Source: Gekko japonicus (lineage: Eukaryota). Taken from it: a stretch of DNA of 63,408 nucleotides. A program made the position numbers and the translations under genes. Below are positions 5,859-47,700 of the stretch, piece after piece. Numbering within the stretch: position 1 is the stretch's first letter; each line of letters begins with the position of its first letter. The stretch is taken from positions 122,447-185,854 of the forward strand of contig NW_015172050.1 of NCBI RefSeq assembly GCF_001447785.1. The letters are read 5' to 3'. The notes under the pieces were generated by a model. It did not search any database, was not told where the DNA came from, and was given only the letters and a program-made list of their open reading frames with translations.

Positions 5859-5875
5859 TCAGGTAAAAAAATAAA
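5859..5875 (-). CDS. VAMP1: VAMP1 exon 5 coding part (LYFFT*)
   Basis: ccgcag|TT TAT TTT TTT ACC TGA. Confidence 0.93.
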
Positions 5876-8800
5876 CTGCGGACAGGAGATGGAAAAGAAG
5901 AGAGAGAACAAGAGGGCACATTACACCAGACGTCCCACACTCCAGGCCGCCGGAAGATCCGGGGAAGGAAGGCCCACACCCTCCCCTCCCCATCCTCCGG
6001 CCTTCCCTTCAGCAGAGAAAGACACCCTAAAGGGTAACGTGACCCCTTCACGGATTTGCTGATCTCGGCTACCACCCGGAGGAGGAGAAAGCCGGCAGAC
6101 GTTGTTTCCCCTGCACCCGTGGCCGGCAGGCAGATGGGCCCCTGCTGTCCAGAGCTTGCGGCTCAGTCGCCCGGCTCCCCGTAGTACTTACGTGCAATTG
6201 CAATCACCACGATAGCGCAGATCACTCCCAGCATGATCATCATCTGGAGAGAAGAGTCGCCGGGTTAGACACAGCCCTTCGTCTACAGCGCAACTCTCTC
6301 CATCTTTAAGGGTCATTCACGCTCGACTCCAAAGCCCCCTTCCCCCACCCCGGATACTAGCCCAGGCAAGCCCGATCTCGTCAGAGCTCAGAAGCTAAGC
6401 AGGGCCAATCCTGGCGAGTACTTGGGTGGGAGACCTCCAAGGAATAACAGGGCTGGGAGGCAGAGGCAGGGAATCGCAAGCCAGCTCTCTGAAACGTCCG
6501 GGGTCGCCAGGAGTCAACCATGACTCAACCACAGGCACACTCACAAAAGAAAAAATACAAAAAATGTTCTCTCAAAGCTCCCCCCCCCCAAAAAAAAACA
6601 CCTCCCCCCATGTTCAGACAGTCTCCTTCTGAAGTCTCTCAAGAGACCCTCTCACACAAGGCAACTCAACACGTCACCCATTATCGGGCTTGCCTTAACC
6701 CAACTCAGATCACTGGTCTATCCAGTTCTCTACTGATCCCCAACAGCAGTCCCCCTAAGGCGTACTATTTCCCAGTCCTGTCCAACCCAGGCCAGGCGCC
6801 AGAATGCTGCCGTCCGCTCAGAACGGTGGCTCGACCCGGCCTCTTGAACGCTCACCTTACAGTTTTTCCACCAGTACTTCCTCTTGAGAGCTGCTGCGCT
6901 ACTTTCAAACACCTGGGCCCCAGCTTGGAGGGCATCCGCTCGCTCGTCGAGTTCTGATAGCTTCTGGTCTCGCTCCAAGACTTTGTCCACATTCACGCGC
7001 ATGATATCCACCACCTGGAGAACGAAAAGGGGCCGTTCTGTCTCTTTTCCTCTCAAGGGCCAAGGCAGTCCCCACATGAGGATGCTTCATACCGAGTCAG
7101 ACCACTGGTCCATCGAGGTCAGTATTTTTTTTTCCATTTTTTTTTCAGTTTTTCACACATATAACATTTCAGTTTCTCAGATTACATAAATTTTTAGAGT
7201 TGTTAACACAAGTTGCAAGTTTTATACGCCTTATTACATAGTTATTTATACAACCATTTCATCTTTTATCCATTTATATACCCTTATCCATCTGTTATCC
7301 AGTATACTTTGATCTTTACCTTGGAGAATTAAACTCAGACCGTCCATTTGTGCTAATTCTAAGATTTTTGCTATTAGGTCCTCCTTAGAGGGTATTTTAT
7401 CTGTTTTCCAGTTTTTGGCCACAAGAATTCGTGCCGCCGTTATAATATATACTATTAGGTATATGTCTTGTTTTCCATAACCTTTTGGGACCATATTCAG
7501 TAGATAAATCTCCGGAGTTAACTCAACTTCTACATTCAATATTTCTACCATAATTCTATATACCATTTTCCAATACTTTTGAATTTCACTACATTTCCAC
7601 CACATGTGGTAGAAGGTCCCCACATTCGCTTTACATTTCCAACATATGTTGGATGCTTGTGGATAGCACCAATACCACCTATGGAACATTTTGTAAATAT
7701 TTTCTTTGTAGGAAATGGCCCTCATAAATTTGATAGATTTCCATATTGTGTCCCATTGTTCAAATTCCATCTCCTTTCCCAGGTCTTGCATCCACGAGAA
7801 CATGACAGCTTTAACATTTTCATCTAACTCGTAATCGTCTAATAAAAACCTATACAACTTCTGAATTAGCTTGTCACTGTATGATAGCCAAATCTTGCCC
7901 AGTTGATTATTTTTATCCTCAAATCCTCTTATTTTATCTTTACCGTATCTATCTTGTAGGAGGTTTTGTTCCCACCATGCTAAACTAATTTGATGTTCAC
8001 TATTCAATTTTTCTTCTGTTTTTATATTATCGTTTCTTTCTAATAGTATGTTGTAGTTAACTATCTTATTTGATGACAAAAGTGAAGGTTTCACGAAAGC
8101 TTCCAGTAGCGATGCCCATCTTGGTACTTTTCTATAAAATCTCCTTTTTATATCACTCCAAACTTTATTTAATGCTCCTCTTAATACATGGCGATTAAAG
8201 ATTTTATGATTTTTTTCCTTTTTGTACCATACGTACGCGTGCCAGCCCATATAAAGATCATGACCTTCTAAGGCAAAGTCCTGGTATCTTCCAGTAATAT
8301 CCATTCTCTTATCCAAGTTAGGGTGGCTGCCTGATAGTACAAAGTCCCATTAGGAATGCTCATTCCTCCTCTTTCTTTTCTATCCTGTAGAACTTTCCAT
8401 TTGATTCTTGCTCTTTTAGGACACCAGATAAACTTTCTAGTAATCCTATCTAGCTCTGTAAAGTATTTTAAATTCTTTAAGATAGGAATATTTTGGGCTA
8501 GAAACAGGAATCTAGGAAGTACATTCATTTTTATTGTCGCAATTTTGCCCATCGAGGTCAGTATTGTCTACTCAAACCGGCCGCAGCTCTCCAGGGCCTC
8601 AGGCGAAGGTCTTTCCCATCACCTGCTGCCTGATCTTTAACTGGAGATTGCGGGGGATCAGGCCCGTAGCCAGGATTTTTTTAATTCGGGGGGGGGCTTT
8701 AAATAAGTCAGGGGGCACCCTGCACACACACCCAAGGGAAGCGCCTGTGCTGGATGGGAAGTGGGGGGCCTTGGCAGTAAGTCAGGGGGCCAGGCCCCGA

Positions 8801-11800
8801 GGTGCCCCACTGTAGCTAAGGGCCTGCCAGGGATTGAACCGGGGAACTTCCGCATGCCAAGCAGATGCTCTGCCACTGAGCGCAGCTTCGCTCCTCCCCT
8901 CTACCAACTTACTTCCTCTACTTGGGCTTGAGTCTGTTGCAGACGGCGATTGCTGGTCAAGTTTGGAGGCTGCCCCGGGGCGCCTCCTGCCCCATCACCA
9001 CCTTCTCCTGCCCCAGGGGCAGGTTGCTGAGCTGGGTCAGACCTGGGGAAACAAAAAAAAAGAAAAGAAAGGTCGCAGCTGTCAATCCTCAGTATTCGCA
9101 GATCGAGATCGGGAACCAAACAACTATGAAAGGAGGCAGTCCTGGGTATTGCACAGCAAGCAGCCTGAGGCAGCCAAGGATATCAGAACCAGAAGAGGTA
9201 CAGAAGGCCAAGATGACCAGGAGGAAAGGACAACTAAAGGGCACTGTGAAAGGAATTTAGAAGACTGCACACTGCATGGTGTAAGATCAAGATAGGTAGT
9301 CATGCTAGTCTGCCTGTAGCAGTAGAAAAGAGTAATAGTCCAGTGGCACCAGAAACACTAACAAAATTTGTGGCAGGGGGTGAGCTTTTGTGCATCACTG
9401 CTCACTTCATCAGATACATTTCACACAGTTGATGGGTTTCCATTCTGTACGGCTAAATATGGTGCCTTCCATGGAGACAGATCAAGGTGGGTAGCTGCGT
9501 TAGTCTGTTGGTAGCAGTAGAAAAGAGCAAGATTCCAGTAGCACCTTAAAGACTAACAAAATTTGTGGCAGGGTATGAGCTTTTGTGAGTCATGGCTCGC
9601 TTCTTCCGATACGGTTCACACGGTTGATGGGTTTCCATTCTGTACGGCCAAATGTGGTGCCTTCCGTGGAGATAGATCAAGACTGGGTAAGCCGTAATAG
9701 TCTATCTGCAGTAGTAAAAAAAGAGCAAGATTCCAGTAGCACCTTAAAGACGAACAACATTTGTGGCGGGGTATGAGCTTTTGTGAGTCATGGCTCACTT
9801 CTTCCGATACGGTTCACACGGTTGATGGGTTTCCATTCTGTACGGCTCAATGTGGTGCCTTCCATGGAGACAGATCAAGACTGGGTAAGCCGTGTTAGGT
9901 CTATCTGCAGCAGTAAAAAAGAGCAAAGAGTCCAGTAGCACCTTAAAGATGAACAACATTTGTGGCAGGAGACAAGCTTCCGTGAGTCACTGCTCACTTC
10001 TTCCGATACATTTCACAAGACTGATGGGTTTCCATTCTGTACGGCTCAATGTGGTGCCTTCCACGGAGACAGATGGGTAGGCGTGTTAGACCGTCGACGG
10101 CAGCGGAAAAGAGCAAGAGTCCGGTAGCACCTTAAAGACTAAAAAAAACTGCGGTAGGGTATGAGCTTTCGTGAGTCACTGCTCACTTCAGGTATCTTCA
10201 GGCATCTGAGGAAGTGAGCGGTGACTCACGCTACTGGATTCTTACTCTTTCCTAGTGTGGTGTAAGTGGAGGGTTTTCCCTGACCTGGATGGCCCTGGCT
10301 AACCTGCTACCATCAGAGCTTGGAAGCTAAGCTGGTTACTGCTTGGACAGGAGACCACCGAGGAATTCCAGGGTCTCCGCGCAGAGGCAGGTGATAAGAA
10401 CATAAGAGATGCCAATGTTGGATCAGGCCAAAGGCCCATCCAGGCCAACACTCTGTATCACACAGTGGCCAGAAATACCAGGTGCCATCAGGAGGTCCAC
10501 CACTGGGACCAGGACATTAGAAGCCCTCCCACTGTTGACCCCCCCCCCCAAGCACCAAGAAGACAGAGCATCACTTGCCCCAGAGCCCCTATCTATACCT
10601 TGTGGCTAATAGCCACTGCTGGACCTCTGCTCCATATGCTTATCTAATTCCCTTTTGCAGCCGTCCATGCTTGTAGCCGCCACCATTTCCTGTGGCAGGG
10701 AATTCCAAGTGTTAATCACTCTTTGGGTGAAGAAGTACTTCCTTTTATCCATTCTAACCCAACCGCTCAGCAGTTTCATGGAGTGCCGACGAGTTCTTGT
10801 ATTGTGAGAAAGGGAGAAAAGTACCTCTTTCTCTACCTGCTCTTTCCCATGCATAATCTTATAAACCTCAATCATGTCTCCCCTCAGTCGTCGTGATGAC
10901 ACAACCACCTCTGAACATTCCTTGCCCCGAAAAGCCTATGGAGTAAGTCGGCTGCAACTGGACAGCACTTTTCACCGCCAAGCGGAGAGTTCATCCTCTT
11001 AGTATGGGAATTCAGGGCCACACAACGACATGGACTGACAGCACATCCTTCAGACCGGGCGTAATCAACTCATGAAATGCAGCAATACAAGAACCATTAG
11101 GATGAATCCCCTATGGGCCATAACCAGATGTCCCTGCTCAAAGGAATACTTTTTCTGGCCACAAGGTGTTGAAGGCCTGTCTGCCTCTGTAACCTTTGAG
11201 TGCTTCCTGGCTGCCCAACCTTGGCGATAGAATGCAGGACCTGACGTCCCATCCGTCCAAACCAGCAGGGCTCTTTCAAACCCGAGAAGGAAGGCAGCAG
11301 AGATTACAGGAATACAAAAGTTAGCCAAGTAGGGTTCATCAGACCCCACAGAAAGAAACCGAGGGGAAGCGACGCGACTGTGTCGTGCCCATCTCGCAAA
11401 GAGCTTTGCCGGGTGCAACTTTCTCCTTAACGTGGGAAAGACAGGTAAGGCAACACAGAGGTGCCAAGAGCCATCACAGAATCGTAGGCCTGAAAGCCAC
11501 CACCCTTCAAACTGCATCTGAGCCAGCAAGTTGCGGGGACGGGACGGGACAAGCCTGCCATTCTCAGCCTCCCTGATCCCCTCGGCATTATGGAAACAGC
11601 CGGTCTAGCAAACAGGGCCAGGGCGAGAATCACAAAGAGAACAAACAGGAAGCACTCCGATACTCGGAAATGCACCCTGTTTGCCTTGCCGGAATCGTTA
11701 GCCGCAAGCTCCTCGGGTCCTTGCTGCAAACAAGGTCACAGAGAGAGCGAGAGGATGCCTCCTTTTTACCATCGTCCCAGGAAGCCAGGCAGGAGCTCAG

Positions 11801-13262
11801 GGCTGCTACCGTTGAGGCAGCCACACAAAGGAACTGCTGTGTCACACAAGAAAGGAACGGGTAGCGCCAGGAGAGAGCCGGCAGCGAAATCCCTTGGCTT
11901 TCCTGCTCCCCCTATTCCTACCCGCAAGAAGCCAGCAGTGGAGTGCTAGTTCTGAACACGGAGCAGAAATTCTAGCTGGGCAACAAAAGGAAGAATTGGG
12001 GGGGTCCCACCAATACGGGCCATCCAGTGTAAGATTCTGCTTTGCGCACCAGGCGAGTGGGGTGGAGGGCTGTTAGGTCCCCGCCAGCTGGGGATAGGGG
12101 GACAGGGTTGCCAGGTCCAGGTTGGGAAACTCCTGGAGATTTGGGGATGGAGTCTGGGGAGGGCAGGGACTTCTCAGTGAGACACAACGCCATGGACTCT
12201 GTCCTCTAAAGCATCCATTTCCTCCAAGGGTCTGATCTCTGCGGGATGGAGATGAGTTGTAATTCCAGGGGATCCCCAGGTCCCACCTGGAGGCTGGCAT
12301 CCTTAGCGGGGAAGCATCAGCTATGCCCAGGTTCAGCCGACGGATAGCCCTAAAGCAAAGGGAAACAAGTCCCCTTGGAAAGCAGGCAGGTCTGTTTGGG
12401 CTCCCCCCCAGGGAAAGCAGGGCGCCTCTAAGGGCATCCGTCACGCTCCACCCTATCAGAAGGGGTCGACCCTCCCAGTCCCATCCCCTTCACACACACG
12501 TTGCTACCAGTGTTCCCTCTAAGCTGAGTTAGTGTGAGCTAGCTCACAGATTTTTAGCCTCAGGCTCACACATTTTTGTCTTCGCTCAGGAAGGAGGGCT
12601 CCAGAGCAAACTAACATGCAGTATAGCCAAATCGCTCACTCACAGCTTGAATGCCAGGAGCTCACAAAGTAGAATTTTTGCTCACAAGACTCCACAGCTT
12701 AGAGGGAACGTTGGTTGCTACCACCCTTGCAAAGGTAGGCTTCCTCCGGGGCAGCGCTTGCCTACCCCGCACCGGGTGGTGATTCACACCCCACTCCCAG
12801 CTGCCTTGCGGCAGTCCCCGTCCCTCTCTCGGCAGCCACGCGTGAGCCCCTACCCCTGTCCGGAGCGCCACCCCAGCCCGCGGGTCAGCCGCACAGAAAA
12901 CGAGGCGGGTTGGCACGTCACGTGCGAACGCAAGCCTGCCCCCACCTTCGCAACTCCGTCCCGGGTTTGCCCCCCGATCCAAATATCTCTACGGGGCGGA
13001 CCAAGGCTCGAAAAGTCCCACGCCCGGGAGGAAAATGCCCTGCAGCTCGAAGGGAAGGCAGCCCGCCCGGGGGACGGCGACTCAGGGCTCGGCCAAGGCG
13101 ACGCGCGGCCGACCCGTCCCCATCCAGACCGGACAGCGGCGGAGGATGGCGGGGAGGGGGGGGGGGGGTGGTGCAATGCGCCACTCGGCAGGTGCCGCAA
13201 CGGTGCCCAGGCAAGCGGCGGCGCCTATGCGGGGGGCCTCCGGCTGGCTCCTCTACTCACAT
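5859..13262 (-). CDS. VAMP1: Vesicle-associated membrane protein 1 (synaptobrevin-1), 119 aa; join(13261-13262, 8913-9042, 6856-7014, 6192-6243, 5859-5875)
   Basis: All introns are GT-AG and frame-consistent. Protein [44 protein letters not shown]|[53 protein letters not shown]|[17 protein letters not shown]|LYFFT*. KNCK and YFFT are VAMP1-type; synteny with MRPL51/NCAPD2 agrees. Confidence 0.97.
6192..6243 (-). CDS. VAMP1: VAMP1 exon 4 (transmembrane helix)
   Basis: tctccag|ATGATGATC ... GCAC|gtaagt; 52 bp. Confidence 0.96.
6856..7014 (-). CDS. VAMP1: VAMP1 exon 3 (R-SNARE motif)
   Basis: ctccag|GTGGTGGAT ... TGTAAG|gtgagc; 159 bp, 53 codons. Confidence 0.98.
7127..8548 (-). mobile_element. 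5'-truncated L1/Tx1-type LINE in VAMP1 intron 2
   Basis: ORF2 C-terminus ([11 protein letters not shown]..., CWKC...[10 protein letters not shown] zf-RVT-like); poly(A) tail; 17-bp TSD ccatcgaggtcagtatt at 7110-7126 and 8549-8565; inserted into a tRNA-derived SINE. Confidence 0.92.
8913..9042 (-). CDS. VAMP1: VAMP1 exon 2 (Pro/Gly-rich N-terminus, start of SNARE motif)
   Basis: ttccccag|GTCTGACCC ... GAGGAA|gtaagt; 130 bp. Confidence 0.96.
9285..10250 (-). repeat. Tandem array of five ~195-199 bp units, each a Penelope-end fragment with a degenerate minimal hammerhead plus a ~65 bp spacer
   Basis: Unit starts at 9285, 9480, 9675, 9873 and 10072. Confidence 0.9.
10396..10890 (-). mobile_element. 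CR1 LINE 3' fragment
   Basis: [16 protein letters not shown]...TRRHSMKL...[17 protein letters not shown]; tcttatgttcttat tail. Related fragments at approx. 15780-15895, 20535-20990, 35170-35630. Confidence 0.92.
12060..12305. mobile_element. TAGGGTTGCCA-TIR non-autonomous DNA element family; other copies approx. 4640-4860, 16856-17050, 17510-17685, 37287-37505, 51082-51335, 52627-53230, 53540-53645
   Basis: Recurrent agggttgcca...tggcaacccta termini and shared internal sequence. Confidence 0.65.
12508..12713 (+). mobile_element. ~205-bp hAT MITE (CAGTGTTCCCTCTAAGCTG TIR)
   Basis: Perfect 8-bp TSD gttgctac. Confidence 0.9.
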
Positions 13263-29487: not shown

Positions 29488-31358
29488 ACATCTAAGGCTT
29501 GGTCTACCTGCTGGAACACAATCAAGGTGCACAGCCAAATGGGGGGGGGGATCTCCAGAGACCTGTTCCATCCCATCTCAGCCTCCTCTTTGATGAGGTC
29601 TTCCCCGAGAAGAACAGTTATCAGGGAGTGACCCTCACATATCCCGGCGACCCTGTCCCAATAACCCTCTTTAGGAGCTGACGAGAACAACCCCAGACCC
29701 TTTTCTCCTGGCGTTCGTAGCACCAGACGCTGCCACACAAACAGCGAGAAAAGGCTGTGGGGCCGGGCTCTGTGTTTGCACGCCGAGGACGGGGGGGGGG
29801 GGCTCTCCAATCTGTCAACTTGGCACCCTTTCCACTAGTCACATCTCAGAGAGATGCTTTGGACTGAGCGCTGTCGGGCTCGGCACCCTCCCATAACTGT
29901 CTCCCGGATAAGGTGGTGGTGGAGGAGGAGGAGATGGGATTTATACCCCGCCCTTCACTACCCAAAGGAGTCTCAGAGCGGCTTACAAACTCCTTTCCCT
30001 TCCCCTCCCCACAACAGACACCCTGTGAGGTGGGTGGGGCTGAGAGAACTCTGACACAATCTGCTCTTTTTCAAGGACAGCTGTGCCAGAGCTTGTGACT
30101 GACCCAAGGTTACATCAGCAGGTGCAAGTGGAGGAGTGGGGGAATCAAACCCGGTTCTCCCAGATTAGAGTCTGCGCACTTAACCACTACACCAAACTGG
30201 TCCGCCCGGTCATCATGGAACACATCGATAAGCTATTTAAGTGTCAGTATCTGAATCTGCTTGCTTTTCTCTTCCCTCTTCCGTCCCCTTTTCCTTTTGT
30301 GTGGTCGTATACTTTATCGTGGGTGTCATAATCGTCCTGAACTGTGGTATGTCAACAGATCATATAAATTAGTTTGGGGAACACAGTACTGGACTCCTCT
30401 TTTTTTGGGGGGCCCTGTCGAGATCCACCTTCCCTCTTGACCCTCTCTGTTACTTTAGCGACGCCCAGGCCGGTAGCCAGGATTTTCTGGCTTGTGGGGC
30501 AAACTTTTTTGGAGGGTGGGGCTTGAATTTTACAGTTTTTTAAAAAAATAAATCCAGCTCCCAACAATCTCCTCACCTCACCTCTCCTTGGCTGTAATTT
30601 CACTCCCCAGCAGGCAAATACTGTGGACCAGTGTTCCCTCTAAGCTGAGTGTGAGCTAGCTCACAGTTTTTTAGCCTCCGGCTCACACATTTTTGTCTCA
30701 GATCAGGGAGGAGGGCTCCAGAGCAAACTAATGTATGCAGCAGCCCAATCGCTCGCTCACAACTTTAATGCCAGCAGCTCACAAAGTAGAATTTTTGATC
30801 ACAAGACTCCACAGCTTAGAGGGAACGTTGTTGTGGACTCCTTCCCAGCAAGCAAGCCCCTTCCTGAGGCAACCCACACGGGATCATGGCCATGAGAGCG
30901 CCTGGGAGACAGTCTCCTTCAGATCAAGGGGCCTGTCTTGTGCTGCCTTGTGGGGCTGTTGCTTTAAGGAAGGGGGCAAAGCCCCAAGTAGCCCCGCCGT
31001 AGCTACGGGCCAGGCTCACCGCCAATGGAAGCTCTCCACCCCACTGAAATCTTCCAGTCCCCTCACAAGAGGCAGGGACAGCAATGGCCTACCTCGCCAA
31101 CCAATCCCCCCCAGTGACTATCCTGACAGGAACCCGCTCTCAGCGTCTCCTCCACACCGTCCAACGCCATCCTCCCAGCTGAACAGACCCTGTCAGGGGC
31201 TGCGGTGAAAGGGTCTTGGGAGGGAAACGAGTGTGCAGAGTCACCTGTGGAGGGAAAAGCAGAGGATCAAGCCAGAATGAGAGCGTCTGGGGGGTGGAAT
31301 GTGTGGATGAGGGAAAGGAGGGAGGGAAGCTGCAGAGGGGAGGGGAGGGGCCCGAGTC

Positions 31359-31375
31359 TCAGGTGAAAAAGTAGA
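31359..31375 (-). CDS. VAMP1-like paralog exon 5 (VYFFT*)
   Basis: ccgcag|TC TAC TTT TTC ACC TGA. Confidence 0.9.
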
Positions 31376-34300
31376 CTGCGGGCCGAAGCAACAAAAGGAA
31401 GAAAAAGAGAAAACGAGAGGTTACGAGAAGAGAGATCACTGCTGGGAAGCCCTCCTGCCCTGCCAGGCCTGTCTGTCCATCACTCAGCAGGCCAAACCCC
31501 CCAAGCCCCAAGGTCTGCCCATCCCTGCCACCGTAACTCACAGATGCTGCCACTGACTCACAGACGGATGGCACTCTTTATCCAGGCCTTACAACTCAGG
31601 GACCTGGCGATCCTAATTCCCCATGGTAAAAAGGTAAAGGTAAAGGTTTCCCTTGCTCGAAAGCCAGTCGAGTCCGCCTCTAGGGTTGCGGTGCTCATCT
31701 CCGTTTCAAAGCCGAAGAGCCAGCGCTGTCTGAAGACGTTTCCGTGGTCATGTGCCGGCATGACTAAACACCAAGGTGCACGGAACGCTGTTCCCTTCCT
31801 GCCGAAGTGGTACCTATTTATCTACTTGCAATTTCTTGCTTTCGAATTGCTAAGTTGGCAGGAGCTGGAACTAGAGACGGGAGCTCACTCCGTCATGCGG
31901 CACACTCGGGTCTTGAACTGCTGAACTACCGACCTTCCACAGCCTGCAGTTCAGCGTCTTAACCACTTGAGCCACCGCAGCCCCACAGTACTTACCTCCA
32001 ATTGCAATGGCCACGATACTACAGATCAATGCCAAAATAATCATCATCTGGAAAGAGAGAGAGAGAAATGCAGTGCATTAGAGCGTCACGTCTACTACTA
32101 CAGGCCGCCCACAAAAAGCAACATGCCCAGTACCGTTCTCGGGAACTGTCCGTTGCAAGCTCACCTTCATGTTTTGGCACCAGTATTTCCTCGCCAGGGC
32201 GGTCGTGCTGTTTTCAAACACTTTGGAGCTCTCGTGGAGAGCATCTGCTTTGTCATCCAGGACACTGAGCTGTTCATCTCGCTTTATGACTTTCTCCATG
32301 TTGTCACACAAGATGCCCACCACCTGAGAGGGGGGGGGAAGAGGAGAGGAAGGAGCCCCCCTCATTAACGGGCAGAGAAACAGGTGCCATTCCGAGGCCG
32401 TTCCGAAGAAGCTGGGATATCACGGACTCACTTGGTTCACTTCAGCTTGAGTCTGCTGCACGCGGCGGTTGCTGGTCAGGTTTTCTGGCTGTTGGGGGGG
32501 ACCTCCAGAAGACTCTCCCCCATCTGGTCCTGCCCCAAGATCAGGTGGCTGTGCTGGCTCAGACCTACAAAGGTCACAAGGCAAGTACAAAAAGAAAGTT
32601 TGGGTATCCGTTACCAATAGAGACCCAGTTTGATGTAGTGGTTAAGAGTGGCGGACTCTAATCTGGGAGAACTGGGTTTGATTCCCCTCTCCTCCACATA
32701 TACCTGCTGGGTGACCTTGAGCAAGCCACAGTTCCCTCAGGAGCTGTTCTCTCAAGAGCAGTTCTCAAGAGAACTCTCTCAGCCCCACTTACGTCACAGG
32801 CAATGCTCCCTCTAAGCTGTGGAGTCTTATGAGCAAAAATTCTACTTGGTGAGCTAGTGGCATTAACGTTGTGAGCGAGTGATTTGGCTGCTGCATGAAT
32901 TAGTTTGCTCCGGAGCCATCCTTCCTGAGCTAAGACAAAAACGTGTGAGCCAGAGGCTACAAAACTGTGGGCTAGCTCGCACTAACTCAGCTTAGAGGGA
33001 ACACTGCTCACATGGTGTCAGTTGTGGGGAGAGGAAGGGAAAGGAGATTGTAAGCTGCTCTGAGATTCCGAGTGAAGGCCGGGGTATCAATCCAATCTCT
33101 TCTTCAATAATCACCCCCACAAGTCACACAGATGCGAGCAACCAAGCAGTCCCCGTTCATAACAACAGTCTGGGACCAGCGTACCTCTGGAACTCCCTCA
33201 CCTGGTACACCCCTCAAAGAGTGTTACGCTCAAGTAATAAAAACCTGCTGGTGATCCCCGGTCCTGAGAGCGTCCAGCTGTCCTCAACCAGAGACGGGAC
33301 TTTATTTTTGCCCTGCCTCCAACTTGGTGGAACGCTCTTCATCAGGGCCCTGCAGGACTTAATACAATTCTGCAAGTCTTGTAAAACAGAGTTGTTCCGC
33401 CAGGCATACAGCTGAGGAGAGCAGCGGCTATTTCCGTCAGGATTTGGCCTCCTCTCTCCCTCCTGCTCCCCTCCCCCCCTCCTTCTTATCAGGCAGTTTT
33501 AGTTCTTTAGATATTTACTCCCTCTTGAGAGTTTACGTCACCAATTGATTTTTGATTATATCTGATTGCATTTTATTGTATCTATTACACTTAAATTACG
33601 AATGTTTTAAACTGTATTTTATGCAGGGGTCATTTCATAGAGAAAGAAGTGCAGGAGCTCATTAGCATAACTCATTACCATAACTTATTTGCATATGCCA
33701 CACACCCTGACATCACCGGAAGTGTGTCAGACAGCAACACCCACCGCTCAGGCTCCACTGGACTGTTTTGGATTGCTAGCTATTGGGGGGGGGGGGAACA
33801 TGCAGATCTGTCCACGCTGTCAGGTTCCACAGCCAACAACTGAGTACACGCTTTCTGGAAAGGTTATACTTTATTGAAGAGCTATAGATGCATTAACAAA
33901 GGCACTGTTAAGAATGGCGTCACTTCTACAAGCATAATGGGATATAGGGTATTTGTATGCATCCCCCCTTCCTTAGGCCAATTAGCCACATTCCCACGCA
34001 CGGGAGAAGGAGCCCCAGGTCGTTAGAGCCGAAGCTGAGAACCGAAAGCGCTCCCACGGTTCCCTAGAATCCCAGACACAACACCCACCTGCAAAGCCAT
34101 AGATAAGCGAGCATTACAGAAGCTGAAAAGGAATGCAGCAGTACTGGCAAGCAAGCACCCCACCCCCAACTCAGCTTGTACCTGAATAAAAGCCGGTCTT
34201 AAAGGTGCCACTGGGCTGTTTTGGGCTGGGTGGCCGGGGGGGGGGGCTCTGCAACTTACCTGGCTGCTTCTTGCTCCTTGTAGCCTGACTGAGGGCTGCT

Positions 34301-37300
34301 GGGAGCAGGGGGTGGGGCTTGTTGCATGTGCCCGCCCCCTGGCCTCCTTACTGCTGGAGCTCCGCTCCTGTGCGCTCCCATAGGAAATGACCCCTGATTT
34401 TATGTATCTCAGATGTTGTCACCCGCCCTGAGCCCAGAGGGCGGGCTATAAGACGTCTAACGTAATAATAAATAAATGAATGTCCCTGGGCGTTTCGATC
34501 ATTCCGCATGGCTTTCTTATGAACTTACTGCCCAATCTTAGGCTAGCCTGACCTTCTCTGATCTTGGAAGCCAATCGGGGTTGGCCCTTGGCTGCTATTT
34601 GGATGGGGGACCACCAGGGCTGTGACGCAGAGGCAGGCAACGGCAAACCGCCCCCGAACACCTCTTGCCTTGACAACCCTGCGAGTTTGCCCTAAGTCGG
34701 CTGTGACTTGGTGGCAACAACAACACAGCCTTGGTTCAAAATCAGTTTGAAAGGAGAAAATAAAAGGGACACATCATTCCCTAAGAGATTTTTAAAAAGA
34801 TAATAAGGCCAAGGCCACTGATACAAGTTAAGTAAAGTGTGTGTAAATTACTACTCAGCTGAAACTTCCCTGCACGTTTCGCCAACGAGCTTCTTCAGGG
34901 GAATCCATAATATAATTTGTTGTTCAGTCGCACAGTCGAGTCCGACTCTTCGCAACCCCATGGACCAGATCACGCCAGGCCCTCCTGTCTTCCGCCATCC
35001 TCTGAAGTTGGCTCAACTTCATGTTCGTTGCATCGATGACACTGTCTAACCATCTCACCCTTTGCCGTCCCCGTCTTCTTTGACCTTCGATCTTTCCCAG
35101 CATCAGGGTCTTCTCCAGTGAGTGCTCCCTTCTCATTTGGTGGCCAAAGTATTTGAGCTTCAGTTTCAGTTCTAAGCCTACCGCTCATTAATTTCATTGA
35201 GTGCCTGTAAGTTCTTCTACTGTGAAAAAGTGAGAAAAGTACTTCTTTCTCTTCCTTCTCTATCCCATGCATAATTTTATAAACTCCTATCATGTCACCT
35301 CTCAGTCGTCATTTCTCCAAGCTCAAGAGCCCTAAGCGCTTTAACCTTTCTTCATACAGAAGGTATTCCATCCCCTTAATCATTTGAGTTGCCCTTTCTG
35401 GCATTTTTTCTAATGCTATCTCTTTTTTGAGGTGCAGTGACCAGAACTGTACACAATATTCCAAATAAGGCCACACCATACATTTATAAATGGGCATTAT
35501 AATACTGGCTGATTTGTTCTGAATCCCGTTCCTAATCATCTCCGGCACAGCATTTGTCTTTTTTTTTTTATCACACGTGTGTTTTTTTTAATCTCAGACA
35601 CATTTTCAGTGAGTTATCAACCACGACTCCTAATTAGTCCTAATTGGTGATTTTAAATTTTGGGGGGTTTTATGTATTTTATGTATTCTATCTACATCGT
35701 AAGCCCCCTTGAGTTTTATAATGTGGCTAATAAACATTATAAATAAATAAGTAAACTCCAGAAGATCTGCCTTGATTCGCAGGAAGATTTGATTTATAAA
35801 GTCAATAAAACAGTTTCTTGCAGTAATAAAATGTGCCAAAGCAAAATCAGTGTTTGTGGTGGCAGAAGTCGCCGTGTTTCACAACCCCCTCAGAGTTTAT
35901 TTCAAACATCTGTCATTAATCATCACTAGCATTTTTGATATTGGGGGGTGTCTCTTTATACCCCTAGTACAGTGATAGCGAACCTTTTAGAGACCAAGTG
36001 CACAGACTGTGACCCAAAACCCACTTATTTATCGCAAAGTGCCAACACGGCCATTTAACCTGAATACTGAGGTTTGACTTTAGAAAAAACAACTCATACA
36101 TTAACTTAAGATGATCCAAACAAAGTAAGGAAAGCAATCCCAAATGCTTTCATTTACTTAAAATTATTTGGCAGAGAATTCAACACTTTAATGATGGTCT
36201 GGGCCTGGCTGGGGCGATGGCACGCGTGCCCACGGAGAGGGCTCTGAGTGCCACCTCTGGCACCCGTGCCATAGGTTCGCCACCACTGCCCTAGTATATC
36301 TCTGTCTGGGGTGAGAGAAATGGTGTCCATCAAAGCTTTTAATGACGATGAGATTTCACTGCAGTACTTCCCTGGATCAGGGTTCGTCAGCAAATACGAA
36401 CAGGTCCTTTCTCATCCCACCGTCTGAGACGGAAAAAAAACTATCCCAGTTGCAAAAAGCCCTGATTTGGATAAGCTAGGCCAGCCTGGTCTCAGAAGCT
36501 AAGCAGGGTCGGCCCTGGTTAGTATTTGGGTGGGAGACCACCAAGGAAGTCCAGGATAGCTACACAGAGGCAGGCACTGGCAAACCACCTCTCAGTGTGC
36601 TTTTGCCTTGAAACTCCCACAGGGTTGCAATAAATCAGCTGGGATTTGACGGCAACAGCACGCAGAAATATCTCAGATTTTCTTCTCCCCTGGGTCTGCT
36701 TTCCGGCTACAGAGAGGGGAAATAACCTACTGACCCCCACTTTGGCGCTATTGTTTTTTGACCACGTTTTTGAGCCTGATGACTCCTGACCCAGAGATTT
36801 TGCTTAGAAGGGGGGAGGGCTCCCTCTCACTTTCGATCCTGCACTGAAACAGTGGGAACCACCCGGCCAGTAGTTATACACCACTTTTAAGCCTCAAGGG
36901 CTGCATGCATACTTTTTAAAAATTACAGAAATTGTACCCCGATTCCCCATCCACAGGGGTTAATACAGCTGGGGGGGGGGGCTCCTTTCCAGTGTAACAA
37001 AAGCAAGGGAGGGAAAAACCTCCCCCCACGCACAACATTCTCCCCCTTGATAAAGCAATCCTGGAGTCCCAGTTTGCAAAAAAAAAAAGTGCTTCAAAGT
37101 AATTTTTGGCCTCCCAGGGAAAGAAGCTGGCTGGATCCTAGCAACAGGCTGCACCTCTGGCTTGGCCCCCAACTAGCCACTTTCCCTGCTGCTGAAGGCT
37201 GGGACCCAGCCAGGACCCTGGGGGTGCATCTCCGCCTGCCCCACTGTGCCACCCTATGGTGGCTGAACCTCAGTGGGCTTTGGCCATAGGGTTGACAACT

Positions 37301-38876
37301 TTCCAGCTGCGGGGAAATCCCTGGGGATTTGGGGGTGGAGCCTTGGGGAGCGTGGGGTTTAGGGATGGGAGGAAGCTCAGTCGGGGATATGATGCCATAG
37401 AGGGCACCCTCCAAAACAGCCATTTTTCTCCAGGGGGACTGTTCTCCGGAGACCAGCTGTCATTCCGGGAGATCTCCGGGTCTCATCTGGAGGCTGGCAA
37501 CCCTGGCCGGTCAACACCTTCTCCAGCTGCCATCCGAAGGGCACCTTACTTCGGAGGAGATCCCTGCTTGGGATCGGGCCCTGGGAGACCCTGCCGCCTC
37601 CTTGCCCCCGCGTCACAGGCGCCCGGCTGGATCCTGCTCCGCCCAAGGCGCGGCCACCGCCCCGGGTCCACCGCCTCGAGATCGGGAGGGAAGAAGGGAG
37701 GCTGGGAAGGGCGGTGGCTGGAGGCGCCGCCAGGGGGTTGCTCCTCCTCGCATACAGCCTGCGAGGGAGAAAGCGAGAGGCGCAAACCGACTTCTGGCGC
37801 CGACCGCGGACGACCAGGCGAGGGGACCCTCCAAATACGTTGCGTGTTCGAGCGCCCCCCCCCCCAAAAAAACCCGGAGGTTCCGGATTCAGCCCAAACC
37901 TCCCTTCAGCCGGCGAGCTCTGCGGCTGTCGCAAAGCCCAGGACTCCTTGCATGACGCTAGACCTCATGGCGCATTCTTCGCAGAGCCAGGCACGTCTAG
38001 GGCGCTTCCCGAAGCGCTTAGCTCTCTTTGGCTGCGGCCGCGCACCCTGAATAATCCACGCTCCGTGCACTTTTCAACTCGAGTTCCCTGCGTGAACGGG
38101 CAAAATCCCGTTGGAAAGTGCACTGAATGTGGATTATTTACTATGCGGGAGTGACCGCAGCCTTTGAGAAAGCCGCCGCCCCAAAACGGCGCCCCTCTGA
38201 GTGAGGCAGGCCACAGAGCGGAGAAACGCCCCGGAACCTGGACTCAGACTAGCCGATTTAGCTGGCCATCCATCCCTCCCTCCCGGGAATTCCAGATAGC
38301 CAACACGATCCTCCCTTACTCCTCTGTGTCACGCCAACCCTGTGAGGTAGGGTCGGTTGGAGAAAATGTGACTCTGGCCCAGGACGCCCCGATGAATTCC
38401 GTAGCAAGAAATCTGAACCTGGGTCTCCTCGGTCCTCCTGAATCACACCGCGCGCACACACCCCGCTCCTCCCAAGCCTCTCCCTCCATTTTGTCTCCTA
38501 ACAACCCTGTGAGGTAGGTTAGGGGGAGAACTATCGGCCCGAGGATGAAATAGTCCGCAGCTTTCCTCTTCCACGATCCGGGGTTGCCTGGCTGCGTGGA
38601 GAGACTAAGCTTTCCCCCTCCCCATAAAACTAGCCCCCAGCAGCAATTTATTGCACCCTCCCCCCCCCCCCTCGCCCCCTCTCCCCCACTTTTCACCCTT
38701 TCTGATGCAACAGGTGAACCCCCGGTGCAAAAATGTAGAGGAAGCTCTCGGATCTGGGAGGTTCGGGCAGATACTAAAGCTGGGTGGGAGATGCCAGGCG
38801 GACGGTGGACCGGCCAGGGAAGAAACTGTTGCCACGCATCACTCAGGAGGGGAGTCGGACCCCCCTGTACTCACAT
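31359..38876 (-). CDS. VAMP1-like tandem paralog (divergent synaptobrevin), 120 aa; join(38875-38876, 32432-32564, 32165-32323, 31996-32047, 31359-31375)
   Basis: Same intron phases as VAMP1 and the same exon sizes except exon 2 (133 vs 130 bp); canonical splice sites; no stops or frameshifts. Protein MSEPAQPPDLGAGPDGGESSGGPPQQPENLTSNRRVQQTQAEVNQ|VVGILCDNMEKVIKRDEQLSVLDDKADALHESSKVFENSTTALARKYWCQNMK|MMIILALICSIVAIAIG|VYFFT*. Confidence 0.9.
31625..31984 (-). mobile_element. Sauria SINE (Squam1) in the last intron of the VAMP1-like paralog
   Basis: tRNA-like head gctgcggtggctcaagtggttaag; (ACCTTT)n tail; very similar copy at 56900-57247. Confidence 0.88.
31996..32047 (-). CDS. VAMP1-like paralog exon 4 (TM helix)
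   Basis: ttccag|ATGATGATT ... GGAG|gtaagt; 52 bp. Confidence 0.92.
32165..32323 (-). CDS. VAMP1-like paralog exon 3 (R-SNARE motif)
   Basis: ctctcag|GTGGTGGGC ... ATGAAG|gtgagc; 159 bp; zero-layer Arg retained (VIKRDEQL). Confidence 0.94.
32432..32564 (-). CDS. VAMP1-like paralog exon 2
   Basis: ttgtag|GTCTGAGCC ... AACCAA|gtgagt; 133 bp. Confidence 0.92.
33624..34396 (+). mobile_element. hAT MITE (CAGGGGTCATTTC TIR)
   Basis: TIR caggggtcatttc/gaaatgacccctg; perfect 8-bp TSD attttatg. Confidence 0.9.
34918..35168 (-). mobile_element. RTE-BovB 3' fragment
   Basis: About 95% identical by eye to the copy at 1365-1610. Confidence 0.93.
35970..36288 (+). mobile_element. hAT-Charlie MITE
   Basis: TIR cagtgatagcgaacct/aggttcgccaccactg; perfect TSD ccctagta. 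Confidence 0.88.
37520..38250. promoter_or_regulatory. CpG island in intron 1 of the VAMP1-like paralog
   Basis: High CpG density 0.6-1.3 kb downstream of paralog exon 1. Confidence 0.55.
38875..38876 (-). CDS. VAMP1-like paralog exon 1 (AT|G)
   Basis: gcagccAT|gtgagtac, the same arrangement as VAMP1 exon 1. Confidence 0.75.
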
Positions 38877-39687
38877 GGCTGCCCCCGCCTCAGTCCCTGG
38901 AGATGGCTCGGCTTCCCCCCAAAGCCTTTCCTCGCGGGCTCCTGGAACTTGCCTTAGACGAACACCTTCCCGAGGGGGAACCAAGCCACAGAGGGGACAG
39001 TGTGCTGTCGCCACACCCACACGAGCCGGCGATGGCGTCACCCCCAGCCCTTCCAGCCGCCGCCCTCCCGGACCTGTGCCAAGTGACTCACTCACTCCTC
39101 AGCAGAGAGGACAGGAGTCTGGCTTCGGCCTGCCTTTCATCTTCCCCCTTTTCTGCTGTGCCCAGCGATCAGCTAACTGGCCAGGACACTGCGGCTCTTT
39201 CTTTCAGCTTCATTGTCACACATAAGGCAGCAAAAGGACTTGGGGGGGGGGGGGAGTGCCGGCCTGTACTCACCAATTTGGAAATCTAACCGGAGAGATT
39301 CCAGTCCAGTAGCACCTTGGGGACCAGAGATTTTCATGGTATATGCTTTCGAGAGTTAAAGGTTTATGGGCCAGGTACCTTTGAGGCTTGAAAGCTTACA
39401 CAGTTGGAAAATCCTGTTGGTCTCGAAAGCGCTACTGGACTCAAATCAAACTGTTCCATTGCTGACCAGCACAGCTCCCTCTGAAACTAATTAATTAAAA
39501 TAATTATCCTATGGCATTGTGTGTAGAACGGCCAGGGGAGCCTAAAATTGTCTGGCAGCCACAAGTTCTGGCTTTTAGTGTTATGCTAATGGTGAGCTAG
39601 ACTTGTTTTTAGGGGCTGACAGAGCTCTGAAAGCACTGTGACTGGCCCAAGGTCATCCAGCTGGCTTCATGTGGAAGAGTGGGGAAT

Positions 39688-44756: not shown

Positions 44757-47700
44757 CTAAGAGGAAGGGGGGGGGGAGGTCATCAGGCAGAGGGGAGAAA
44801 GGTTAGTTTTGGAGTCCATCACTTTCACCAGGGTCTACAACTGGTAAACAAATGTGCTGTTGATTCAACTCCTTTCTTTCTTTGCCCAGTTAGGGGTAAC
44901 GGTCAGAGTGCTGGATTCGGATCTGGGAGACCCAGGTTCAGATCCTCACTCTGCCACAGCAGCTGACTGGGATGTCATACGGAGGATGGTGTGGAGTTGT
45001 TTTCTGTTGCCCCAGAAGGTCGGACCAGAACCAACAGGTTGAAATTAAATCAAGAGTTTTCGGCTAAACATTAGGAAGAACTTTCTGACAGTAAAAAAAA
45101 AGGTTCCTCAGTGGAACAGGCTTCCTCGGGAGGTGGTGGGCTCTCCTTCTCTGGAGGTTTACAAACAGAGTCTAGATGGGCCATATGACAGCAATGCTGA
45201 TTCTGTGAACTTAGGCATGTCATGAGAGGGAGGCTGCAGGAAAGGTTGCGTCAGTGCTTAGTTCTCGTGACCCTTTCTTACACGCCCAGGGAAATGCTGA
45301 TCACCACTTGGGGTCAGGAAGCAATTTTTCTCCAGGCCAGTTTGCCTGGGGATCTTGTAGGGGTTTGTTGTCATTTTCTGGGTGTGGAACAGGGATCACT
45401 GGTGTGGGGGGGAGGTATTTGTGAATTTCCTGCATTGTGCAGGGGGTTGGACTAGATGACCTTGGAGGTACCTTCCGACTCTATGACTCTATGACCCTGG
45501 GCCAGTTACACAATCTCAGTCTAACCCATCCCCACGAGGTGGTTGTTGTGGGAATAAAATGGAAGACAGGAGCACGGCATGTGCTGCTTTGGGTCTACAC
45601 TGAGGAGAAAGGCAGGACAGGAATTAAATAAATAAATATGATAGCAGCTGATGCAGAATGTTCCCTTCAAGCCACCCTTACCATCCCTCAGGAGCACAAC
45701 ACCTAGTACAGTGTTTAAAGTGTCAGACTAGTTGACTTTAAAAATGCCAGTGCCATCGCATCAAACTTATTGATACAAGCAGAAACGGTGAAAACGGCAG
45801 AGAAGACAACACTGACGTGTTCAGGTACCCTGCTGCTTTTGAGTTCACTTAATTCCAGAAAAGATAGTATGGTGGAACCGACAGAGCGCTGGACTAGGCC
45901 CGGAAAGTGGTGGTGCAACGTGCCATCAAGTCACAGCCGCCCGATAGCAACCCTGTCGGGTTTTCAAGGCAAGAGACAAAACAGAAGTGGTTTGCCATTG
46001 CCTGCCTCTGTGTAGTGATCCTGGCCTTCCTTGGTGCGCTCCCCCAAGAGCTAACCAGGGCTGACCCTGCTTAGCTTCCAAGATCTGACGAGAAGACACA
46101 AGATCAAATCCTGCTTGCCAAAAAAAAAAAAAAAATCCATACTGGGTAACCTTGGACCGATCACTCTCCCCCAGCCTGACCTATCTCACAGGGATGTTGT
46201 GAGATTAAACTGGAGTCTATCACCCTGAGCTCCGTGGAGGAAGGACAGGATAAAAATGTAATAAATAAAATCTAGCTCGTCCAAATTAAACTGTCACTAT
46301 CATCACCCACAACCTGCACGCCCAGCCTTCAGAATAACACCTCACTGTAGCACTATTTTAATGGGACCAGTGAAAACGTTTCCAGTTTACTGCACAAAAG
46401 CTTTAACCTGCTGATCCCGTTTACTGCCAAAAGCATAATTTCTTTCATCCATTGAAATTCTTTGTCTTTCTTATACTTACCCAAAATTCCAATGTTGTCA
46501 TAGACCCCAAACAGGGCTCGTTTTTCTGTCCATCGATCAACTGGTTTGGGCTTGGGAGGCTCCTTCACGCGGAATGGGTACGGATTACCTGGGGGAAAGG
46601 GAAAAGCGAGAATTAGAAAATGATTGATTGGAAAACTCCACATCTGAGGGCCTTTCCTCTTGCATTCAGAGGGAAGGAACTTCATAATCCAAAAGCCCTT
46701 ATCTAAGAACTAGTGCCCTGTCAACAAGAGAGTCAAAAGCGGGCCTCAGAGGTTGGTGACGGTGCGCCCAAGGCGCCGGGAAGGACTTGGGGAGCCGCTG
46801 CCAGTCTGTGCAGACAAGGCTGCCCTTTGCAGCCGCCCGGCCACCCTCTCCCGCCGACACGCCACCCCTCCACCCACCTCGTTCTCCGCCTCCTGGGCCC
46901 CCTCGGCACCGGGCATCACAGGGAAGGGAAGAGAGCAGCGTGAGTGGCTGCCGGGGCCTGCTGACCGGCCATCGGGGGAGGATCCAGACACACAGAGTTC
47001 CCCAAGCTGCCCGGGCGCCCTCCCCCGCTGACGCGCCACCCCTTCGCCTGCCTCGCTCTTTGCCTCGCCCCCGCGTGCTGGGCACCACAGGGAAGGGAAG
47101 GGAAGAGAGTGGCGTGCATGGCTCTCCAGGCCTGTTGACCAGCCATCAGGGGAGGAGGATCCAGTCGAGTTCCACTGGAAAGCAGAGCGGAGGAGAAGCC
47201 CAGCGCCACTCGGGGAGCACGCCTGCCCCCCCAGCCTCTCCAGACCCAGGTAAGAACAGTCCCAGCAGCTCCCCACGCGGCGCGCGTGGCTCCCCAGGCC
47301 TGCTGACCGGCCGTCAGAGGAGGCTGTCAGGGGAGGAGGATCCAGTCGCGCCAACAGCAGAGGCACTGAACCCCCAGGCCAAGAGCCCGCCACTAGCTAC
47401 AGCAGATCGGGGACTTTCTTCTCTCCAGGCCCCGCCTAGAGGTTGGCAACCCCGTAATTGGGCACACGGGGGGGGCGCCAGAAGGTAGCCCCGCCTAGGG
47501 CACAAAAAAACCTCAGGCTGGCCCTGGGTACAACAGGGAGCATCATCTTCACATAACAGCGTTATCTCTTTGATGCATTTATATACTGACTATGCCAACA
47601 AATAAAACAATGGCACATAGATTGGAAACGGTTGATTTACATTTCAATTCTGAAAAAGGAGAGCAAAGATTGCAGCAACTATAGAACTGTTGCATTAATT

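What the first reader, a model, noticed from the sequence alone, without database searches (positions are those of the whole stretch)
31359..38876. Intact, rapidly diverged tandem duplicate of VAMP1: a candidate extra synaptobrevin
Seen: a second gene ~18 kb upstream of VAMP1 with five exons, the same phases and near-identical sizes (2/133/159/52/17 versus 2/130/159/52/17), canonical splice sites and an open 120-aa frame. Exon 3 is only 28/53 identical to the neighbouring VAMP1, and many synonymous sites differ too, so the duplication is old and the frame has survived. It shares the local VAMP1's V76-F77 and A83 (VAMP2 numbering) and YFFT end, so it derives from VAMP1, not VAMP2/3/8. The SNARE layers stay compatible (V,Q,V,V,L,M,V,R0,L,L,A,L,S,F,T,L) while outward-facing residues change. 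Known: the mammalian locus has a single VAMP1 between TAPBPL and MRPL51, and synaptobrevin SNARE motifs are normally almost invariant. Inference: a neofunctionalised lineage-specific R-SNARE, possibly non-neuronal (testis, gland or skin).
Basis: partly seen in the sequence, partly recalled or inferred. Interest (0 to 1): 0.88.

Follow-up and report, generated by a model that had tools for sequence, protein, structure and literature searches.

The report
Old fast-evolving VAMP1 duplicate in lizards
Next to the normal synaptobrevin-1 gene this gecko carries a second, intact and spliced copy that arose in early lizards, has changed about 25 times faster than its neighbour while keeping its membrane-fusion core, and is already auto-annotated in databases but, in the searched papers, never studied.

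Summary
On the minus strand at 31359-38876 there is a five-exon, 120-codon synaptobrevin gene with canonical splice sites. It lies about 18 kb upstream of the canonical VAMP1 (5859-13262) and downstream of MRPL51.

- **Already annotated.** Its product is identical to the public record 'PREDICTED: vesicle-associated membrane protein 1-like [Gekko japonicus]'.
- **Not gecko-specific.** Orthologues exist in five further geckos and two scincoid lizards (Tiliqua, Hemicordylus), named inconsistently as VAMP1, VAMP1-like or VAMP2-like.
- **One old duplication.** These eight form one clade (100/99) nested with squamate VAMP1 (99/98). Independent duplications are rejected (AU p 0.006 and 0.001). No copy was found among annotated proteins of teiid, lacertid and amphisbaenian lizards (Laterata), iguanians, varanids, snakes, birds, crocodilians, turtles or mammals.
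- **Fast but constrained.** The canonical squamate VAMP1 core is invariant; the duplicate's root-to-tip path is about 25 times longer. The 0-layer arginine and most core layers are kept, all eight frames are open, and in geckos the C-terminal SNARE half and juxtamembrane region are 85-94% conserved.
- **Transcribed.** One assembled contig from a run of unrecorded type joins exon 3 to exon 2 exactly. Three RNA runs show almost no reads.

Verdict: a real, uncharacterised squamate R-SNARE paralogue. Neofunctionalisation and tissue remain untested.

The parts
38875..38876 (-). Paralogue exon 1, coding part (AT of the start codon). The 5' UTR lies at higher coordinates, at least to about 38918.
   Evidence: AT|gtgagt donor. 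The upstream 45 nt translate to a match with the N-terminal extension of the Euleptes orthologue. The spliced contig of run X1 has 89 unplaced letters beyond exon 2.
32432..32564 (-). Paralogue exon 2 (133 nt): proline-rich N-terminus and start of the SNARE motif.
   Evidence: AG/GT boundaries, 44 codons. Equals residues 2-45 of P0156. Joined to exon 3 in an X1 contig.
32165..32323 (-). Paralogue exon 3 (159 nt): core of the SNARE motif, including the 0-layer Arg and the juxtamembrane region.
   Evidence: Pfam Synaptobrevin 56.6 bits against a cut-off of 26.4. Best solved relative is VAMP2. Equals residues 46-98 of P0156. The spliced contig begins exactly at 32165 and jumps from 32320 to 32429, which equals 32323/32432 because the 3-nt 'gtg' occurs on both sides.
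31996..32047 (-). Paralogue exon 4 (52 nt): transmembrane anchor.
   Evidence: AG/GT boundaries. Equals residues 99-115 of P0156. Kyte-Doolittle 19-residue maximum is 2.84 at residues 101-119.
31359..31375 (-). Paralogue exon 5 (17 nt): completes the V codon, then YFFT and the stop. The 3' UTR continues to lower coordinates.
   Evidence: AG acceptor and TGA. X1 contigs cover 31103-31570 and 30171-30647 at depth 5-7.
5859..13262 (-). Canonical VAMP1: coding exons at 13262-13261, 9042-8913, 7014-6856, 6243-6192 and 5875-5859. A TATA-like box lies near 13420.
   Evidence: tblastn and direct reading. The exon 3-4 product is identical to VAMP1 of 12 other squamates.
46356..46685 (-). MRPL51 exon, the upstream neighbour that fixes synteny.
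   Evidence: Pfam MRP-L51, E 2.1e-10, 41 bits against a cut-off of 25.

Best explanation
This is a functional, transcribed, brevin-type R-SNARE gene, a paralogue of VAMP1 (call it VAMP1L). It arose by one tandem duplication inside the VAMP1-MRPL51 interval. The duplication most likely happened on the squamate stem, after squamate VAMP1 acquired V76 and A83, and before geckos split from other lizards.

After duplication the copy changed quickly at solvent-facing positions of the SNARE helix and in the juxtamembrane linker (fixed changes Q71H, A72D/E, G73S, A82T, K85A; in geckos also W90C and K91Q). It kept the 0-layer arginine, the hydrophobic layers and the tail anchor. In geckos the new C-terminal half then came under purifying selection.

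Inferred mechanism: it still zippers with Q-SNAREs to drive vesicle fusion, but with altered recognition by proteins and lipids that read the synaptobrevin surface and linker. It would therefore serve a specialised or differently regulated secretory route. Shown: gene structure, identity with a public model, orthologues, phylogeny, conservation pattern, one spliced contig. Inferred: fusion competence, changed partner specificity, tissue.
For: - **Structure and frame:**
- **Family:** Pfam Synaptobrevin on exon 3 and alignment to VAMP2 chains with Arg at the 0 layer.
- **Public model and orthologues:** product identical to P0156, Gekko japonicus VAMP1-like. Orthologues in Heteronotia, Sphaerodactylus, Euleptes, Eublepharis, Paroedura, Tiliqua and Hemicordylus score 181-304 bits, against at most 154 for any canonical VAMP. 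In the profile search they score 204-234, against at most 188.
- **Phylogeny:** the paralogue clade has support 100/99, and with squamate VAMP1 99/98. Its stem is 0.29 and its tips 0.04-0.42, against 0-0.06 for canonical tips. AU tests reject a gecko-only duplication (p 0.006) and a scincoid-only duplication (p 0.001).
- **Core kept, surface changed:** R56 is invariant and 9-14 of 16 layers are unchanged, while 17-27 of 40 non-layer positions are changed. This is significant in five of eight species.
- **Constraint in geckos:** pairwise identity is 0.85 in the C-half and 0.94 in the juxtamembrane region, although these parts are only 0.50-0.57 identical to canonical VAMP1.
- **Selection estimate:** pairwise dN/dS between the two window copies is 0.29 with dS 0.93. 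All non-synonymous change falls on the paralogue, because the canonical protein is invariant. That implies roughly 0.5 on its lineage (inference).
- **Transcription:** a 449-nt contig of run X1 joins exon 3 to exon 2 at the predicted boundaries.
- **Synteny:** MRPL51 lies upstream.
Against: - Three RNA-seq runs of the species, sampled at 3-12% of reads, give depth of only 0-0.45 on exon 3. Expression is therefore low or restricted in those samples.
- The kind of run X1 is only guessed to be RNA. It also holds an unspliced contig across exon 5 and part of intron 4.
- No copy was found in most squamate lineages, so the gene is dispensable there.
- The N-terminal SNARE half stays variable even among geckos (0.69). 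Two species (Euleptes, Paroedura) show as many layer as non-layer changes.
- An origin before the amniote VAMP1 radiation is disfavoured but not rejected (AU p 0.088).
Confidence: 0.72

Rival explanations
1. A slowly dying redundant copy: transcribed at low level, under relaxed constraint, with no function of its own. It has already been lost in most squamates and merely has not yet been disabled in geckos and scincoids.
For: Protein evolution is about 25 times faster than in the neighbour. Depth is near zero in three RNA runs. The copy is absent from annotated proteins of Laterata, Iguania, Anguimorpha and snakes. The lineage dN/dS is roughly 0.5, not far below 1 (inference).
Against: Eight species separated by the deepest splits among the squamates sampled here all keep an open frame of 119-120 codons, the 0-layer Arg and the tail anchor. 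A neutral 360-nt frame would be expected to collect many frameshifts over a synonymous distance near 0.5 per lineage (inference). Gecko copies are 85-94% identical in exactly the parts that differ most from VAMP1. That is the signature of constraint on a new sequence, not of drift.
Confidence: 0.13
2. A modulatory or inhibitory R-SNARE: it enters SNARE complexes but fuses poorly, because the juxtamembrane linker has lost a basic residue and, in geckos, one of the two tryptophans. It would then tune or compete with VAMP1/2-driven exocytosis instead of driving a route of its own.
For: K85A is fixed in all eight species; W90C and K91Q occur in all six geckos. The layers are kept, so assembly is plausible. 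The importance of the linker for fusion efficiency is my knowledge of the synaptobrevin-2 literature and was not tested here.
Against: The tail anchor and R86, K87, Y88 and W89 are intact. The scincoid copies keep WW. There are no functional data of any kind.
Confidence: 0.1
3. An older amniote paralogue, not a squamate-stem duplicate: the duplication preceded the split of amniote VAMP1 lineages and the copy was lost in mammals, birds, crocodilians and turtles. The V76 and A83 shared with squamate VAMP1 would then come from gene conversion or convergence.
For: The AU test does not reject a tree with all canonical VAMP1 as one clade excluding the paralogues (p 0.088). Long branches make the placement uncertain.
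Against: The free tree puts the paralogues with squamate VAMP1 at 99/98. The N-terminal variable region of exon 2 is closest to squamate VAMP1. This rival needs several extra losses.
Confidence: 0.05

Closest known systems
VAMP1 (synaptobrevin-1), the adjacent parent gene
   Same: Same locus and strand, and the same five-exon layout and phases (2/130-133/159/52/17). Same domain order: proline-rich N-terminus, R-SNARE motif, basic-aromatic linker, tail anchor, YFFT end. It shares squamate VAMP1's V76 and A83.
   Different: Only 28/53 identical in exon 3, whereas canonical VAMP1 exon 3-4 is invariant in 12 squamates. The root-to-tip path is about 25 times longer. Clade-specific substitutions are fixed at positions 71-73, 82 and 85.
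VAMP2 and VAMP3 (synaptobrevin-2, cellubrevin)
   Same: Brevin-type R-SNAREs. VAMP2 chains are the best solved relatives of exon 3 (E about 2e-11). Layer residues are largely the same.
   Different: The VAMP2 sequences form a separate clade (100/99), and the N-terminal region is unlike VAMP2. Some database names of the orthologues ('VAMP2-like') are therefore misleading. VAMP3 was not sampled in the tree.
Divergent brevins VAMP5 and VAMP8 (from memory: tandem neighbours in mammals with non-neuronal roles)
   Same: They are a precedent for a tandem brevin pair in which one member has a much-changed SNARE surface and a specialised role. VAMP8 chains match exon 3 weakly (E about 1e-5).
   Different: No specific relationship: the paralogue is VAMP1-derived and much younger. 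The comparison rests on my knowledge and was not tested here.

Membership tests
Brevin-type R-SNARE (Pfam Synaptobrevin PF00957) | SNARE motif matching the family profile above the curated threshold | tested here: met
   Exon 3 alone scores 56.6 bits against a cut-off of 26.4, E 2.4e-15.
Brevin-type R-SNARE (Pfam Synaptobrevin PF00957) | Arginine at the central 0 layer | tested here: met
   The R of the KRDE stretch aligns with VAMP2 R56. It is invariant in all eight paralogues.
Brevin-type R-SNARE (Pfam Synaptobrevin PF00957) | Hydrophobic heptad layers -7 to +8 compatible with a four-helix bundle | tested here: met
   In Gekko 12 of 16 layers are identical to VAMP1 and 4 are changed (L32V, M46L, A74S, A81T). 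Across the clade 9-14 of 16 are unchanged. The layer register comes from my knowledge of the published structure.
Brevin-type R-SNARE (Pfam Synaptobrevin PF00957) | Single C-terminal transmembrane anchor, short N-terminus without a longin domain | tested here: met
   Kyte-Doolittle 19-residue mean is 2.84 at residues 101-119 of 120. The 44-residue exon 2 product has no Pfam domain.
Brevin-type R-SNARE (Pfam Synaptobrevin PF00957) | Forms a fusogenic complex with Qa, Qb and Qc SNAREs | not testable with these tools
   Needs biochemistry.
VAMP1 lineage (as opposed to VAMP2/3) | Genomic position beside MRPL51 and VAMP1-type exon structure | tested here: met
   Order on the minus strand is MRPL51 exon 46356-46685, paralogue 38876-31359, VAMP1 13262-5859.
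VAMP1 lineage (as opposed to VAMP2/3) | Groups with VAMP1, not VAMP2, in a tree | tested here: met
   VAMP1 plus paralogues separate from VAMP2 at 100/99. Paralogues plus squamate VAMP1 group at 99/98. The finer placement within VAMP1 is not decisive (AU p 0.088). VAMP3 was not sampled.
VAMP1 orthologue (the gene itself) | Near-invariant SNARE motif, as in all sampled canonical VAMP1 | tested here: not met
   53% identity in exon 3, and the true orthologue sits 18 kb away. It is a paralogue, not VAMP1, whatever the name given in Hemicordylus.

The most novel reading that the evidence does not exclude
Early lizards gained a second synaptobrevin-1. It kept the fusion core but rebuilt the whole regulator- and protease-facing surface and the membrane-proximal linker. 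Geckos and scincoids have held it under selection for well over 100 million years while other squamates lost it. That would make it a dedicated v-SNARE for a lineage-restricted secretory process, and a natural experiment on which synaptobrevin surface residues are free to change without losing fusion.
Probability: 0.35. Interest if true: 0.6.

Novelty: new member of a known kind. Interest (0 to 1): 0.45.

Why it matters
Synaptobrevin SNARE motifs are among the most conserved vertebrate protein segments. In this data set the canonical squamate VAMP1 core does not vary at all across 12 species.

A sister gene from the same locus changed half of its SNARE-motif residues, mostly off the core layers, and then froze a new C-terminal half in geckos. 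It is a ready-made map of which surface positions are dispensable for the fold and which may encode partner specificity.

It also corrects inconsistent public names: the same gene is called VAMP1, VAMP1-like and VAMP2-like. Finally, it gives a clear presence/absence character across squamates. It does not by itself open a long-standing question, and its function is unknown.

Tried and rejected
- **Exon-only search.** Scoring exon 3 alone against 1.84 billion cluster representatives gave no hit above 58% identity. That could have been read as 'no orthologue', but one hit (P0007, Hemicordylus) carried the paralogue's derived residues and led to the family.
- **Fetching orthologous loci.** No synteny or codon analysis of the other species could be done.
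- **Length limit.** The search for homologous proteins cannot use a 53-residue exon to reach 120-residue proteins. I used alignments whose rows were public proteins plus the window's exons as separate referenced rows.
- **Joined model.** The joined spliced model was never built or searched. Identity to P0156 was shown piece by piece.
- **Alternative C-termini.** The alternative C-terminal tails of the Euleptes, Sphaerodactylus, Eublepharis and Paroedura isoforms were looked for in the window. No convincing match was found.
- **3' end.** Only one ATTAAA at 30769 was found, and repeats mask the depth profile. The end of the 3' UTR is unresolved.
- **Literature.** Six searches for any description of the duplicate found nothing relevant. 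A search to confirm the layer numbering found nothing, so the register rests on my knowledge.
- **Further copies and neighbours.** A third VAMP copy in the window is rejected: tblastn finds only the two. TAPBPL and NCAPD2 were looked for among long ORFs without success.
Full report

Yes. Reading the minus strand and checking boundaries by script gives five exons:
- 38876-38875: the AT of the start codon, followed by gtgagt.
- 32564-32432: 133 nt.
- 32323-32165: 159 nt.
- 32047-31996: 52 nt.
- 31375-31359: 17 nt, ending in TGA.

Every intron begins with GT and ends with AG. The exon translations are a proline-rich N-terminus, a synaptobrevin SNARE motif, and a hydrophobic anchor ending in YFFT.

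tblastn of the exon products against the window finds exactly one other copy. This is the canonical VAMP1, with coding exons at 13262-13261, 9042-8913 (130 nt), 7014-6856, 6243-6192 and 5875-5859. It has the same phases and sizes except for one codon in exon 2. Exon 3 is 28/53 identical between the copies. The duplicate's stop lies about 18 kb upstream of the canonical exon 1.

Exon 3 alone passes the Pfam Synaptobrevin threshold (56.6 against 26.4 bits). Its best solved relatives are VAMP2 chains, with the arginine of the 0 layer aligned.

**2. What is it?**

I searched exon by exon, by reference.

Exon 3 against 1.84 billion cluster representatives gave nothing above 58% identity. One hit, P0007, shared the paralogue's unusual residues. 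It is a Hemicordylus capensis protein that NCBI names 'vesicle-associated membrane protein 1', with five isoforms that differ only at the C-terminus.

An alignment of that protein with the window's exons as separate rows retrieved a sharply separated group scoring 181-304 bits, against at most 154 for any canonical VAMP:
- Gekko japonicus 'VAMP1-like' (P0156)
- Heteronotia binoei
- Sphaerodactylus townsendi
- Euleptes europaea
- Eublepharis macularius
- Paroedura picta
- Tiliqua scincoides
- Hemicordylus capensis

P0156 is tiled exactly by the window's exon translations: residues 2-45, 46-98, 99-115, the split V codon, and 117-120. The window is therefore G. japonicus or something nearly identical. 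The gene model has been in public automatic annotation for years, as the 'PREDICTED' prefix suggests.

A profile of the eight paralogues found no further members. After them come only canonical VAMP1 of Salvator, Rhineura, Sceloporus, Phrynosoma, Phrynocephalus, Varanus, Zootoca, pythons, boas and colubrids, then birds, crocodilians and mammals.

**3. Age and origin**

The canonical VAMP1 product from exon 3 to the end of the anchor is invariant in all 12 squamates sampled. These include second copies from Euleptes, Sphaerodactylus, Tiliqua and Gekko kuhli. Those species therefore have both genes.

In a maximum-likelihood tree of 28 sequences and 115 columns:
- The eight paralogues form one clade (100/99).
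- That clade groups with squamate VAMP1 (99/98), apart from bird, crocodilian and mammalian VAMP1.
- All of these are separate from VAMP2 (100/99).

AU tests reject a gecko-only duplication (p 0.006) and a scincoid-only duplication (p 0.001). They do not quite reject a position outside all amniote VAMP1 (p 0.088).

The shared V76 and A83, which among the sampled VAMP1 sequences occur together only in squamates, favour a duplication on the squamate (or lepidosaur) stem. So does the squamate-like N-terminal region. Tuatara was not sampled.

An MRPL51 exon at 46356-46685 on the same strand shows that the copy sits between VAMP1 and its usual neighbour.

The apparent absence from Laterata, Iguania, Anguimorpha and snakes suggests loss in their common ancestor. 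This rests on annotated proteins only.

**4. Rate and constraint**

From the split, the path to the Gekko paralogue is about 0.78 changes per site. The path to the canonical Gekko kuhli protein is about 0.03, so the ratio is near 25 (branch lengths).

The change is not random:
- R56 is invariant.
- 9-14 of 16 layer positions are unchanged, whereas 17-27 of 40 non-layer positions differ from VAMP1. This contrast is significant in five of eight species.
- Positions 71, 72, 73, 82 and 85 carry clade-wide replacements: H, D/E, S, T and A.

Among the six geckos, the C-terminal SNARE half is 85% identical pairwise and the juxtamembrane region 94%. These same parts are only 50-57% identical to VAMP1. 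The N-terminal half is 69% identical pairwise. That pattern is early change followed by constraint.

Nei-Gojobori dN/dS between the two window copies is 0.29, with dS 0.93 near saturation. The canonical protein has not changed, so all non-synonymous change belongs to the paralogue. This implies roughly 0.5 averaged over its whole history (inference).

All eight species keep an open frame of 119-120 codons in at least one isoform.

**5. Expression**

Laying reads on 28900-34800 gave the following.
- **Run X1** (assembled contigs; its kind is only guessed to be RNA) has a 449-nt contig at depth 10. It runs 32165-32320 and then directly 32429-32564. This is the exon 3/exon 2 junction, with a 3-nt ambiguity because 'gtg' occurs on both sides.
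- The 68 letters before and the 89 letters after were not listed. Their lengths fit exon 4 plus 16 nt of exon 5, and exon 1 with its 5' UTR. This is an inference.
- The same run has contigs at depth 5-7 over 31103-31570 (exon 5 with part of intron 4, unspliced) and over 30171-30647. Unique intron 1 sequence is near zero.
- **Three bona fide RNA-seq runs** of the same species label, sampled at 3-12% of reads, show only 0-0.45 depth on exon 3.
- The tool warns that conserved genes can lose reads to its filter. The large depths elsewhere in the stretch are repeats.

Splicing is thus shown once, and the level is low or tissue-restricted. Tissues are coded and unknown to me.

**6. How it probably works**

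Everything that defines a fusogenic brevin is present: the motif, the 0-layer Arg, the layers, the linker with R86, K87, Y88 and W89, and the tail anchor. The most likely reading is a working v-SNARE.

What changed is the outside of the helix and the linker. In synaptobrevin-2 these are contacted by regulators and membrane lipids and are recognised by proteases (my knowledge, not tested here). I therefore infer altered regulation or partner choice, not a new fold.

The rivals are a decaying redundant copy, a poorly fusogenic modulator, and an older amniote paralogue. Each is scored in the Rival explanations section above.

**7. Comparison and novelty**

It works like VAMP1/2 and descends from VAMP1, but it is not the VAMP1 orthologue. 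It fails the near-invariance that marks every canonical VAMP1 here, and the true orthologue lies beside it.

Six literature searches found no description of it. It is a new, uncharacterised member of a well-known family, already present in automatic annotation under inconsistent names.

**8. Limits**
- The layer register could not be confirmed from a paper.
- The 44-N run at 25930-25973 was left alone.

Noticed in passing
window 46356-46685 (-): An exon of MRPL51 (Pfam MRP-L51, E 2.1e-10). The order on the minus strand is MRPL51, the VAMP1 paralogue, then VAMP1.
   Followed up: partly
window 5859-13262 (-) and proteins P0056, P0274-P0284: The canonical squamate VAMP1 product from exon 3 through the anchor is identical in 12 squamates. 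It carries E65, V76 and A83, where bird, crocodilian and mammalian VAMP1 have D, Q/I/V and K.
   Followed up: partly
Positions 54-55, 58-59, 66 and 81-82 are changed. V76 is already present in the canonical squamate gene. This is descriptive only; cleavage was not tested.
   Followed up: partly
window about 31660-31985, 32600-32700, 29885-30278, 30476-30869: tRNA-derived SINE-like and other repeats inside and beside the paralogue's introns draw RNA depths of hundreds to thousands and many false joints. One repeat starts 13 nt after the exon 4 donor.
   Followed up: no
window 47632-47898 (+): A reverse-transcriptase fragment (Pfam RVT_1, 28.5 bits, just under the cut-off), probably a LINE remnant.
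   Followed up: no
proteins P0007, P0152-P0155, P0159-P0162: Orthologues in Hemicordylus, Sphaerodactylus, Euleptes, Eublepharis and Paroedura are predicted with several alternative C-terminal ends after the anchor. This recalls the alternative last exons of mammalian VAMP1 (from memory). No counterpart of those tails was found in the window.
   Followed up: partly
window 38874-38918 (-): The 5' UTR just upstream of the paralogue's ATG translates to a 15-residue match with the predicted N-terminal extension of the Euleptes orthologue. Exon 1 is therefore homologous between geckos, and some models start at an upstream ATG.
   Followed up: no
window 25930-25973: A run of 44 N between the two VAMP genes.
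   Followed up: no
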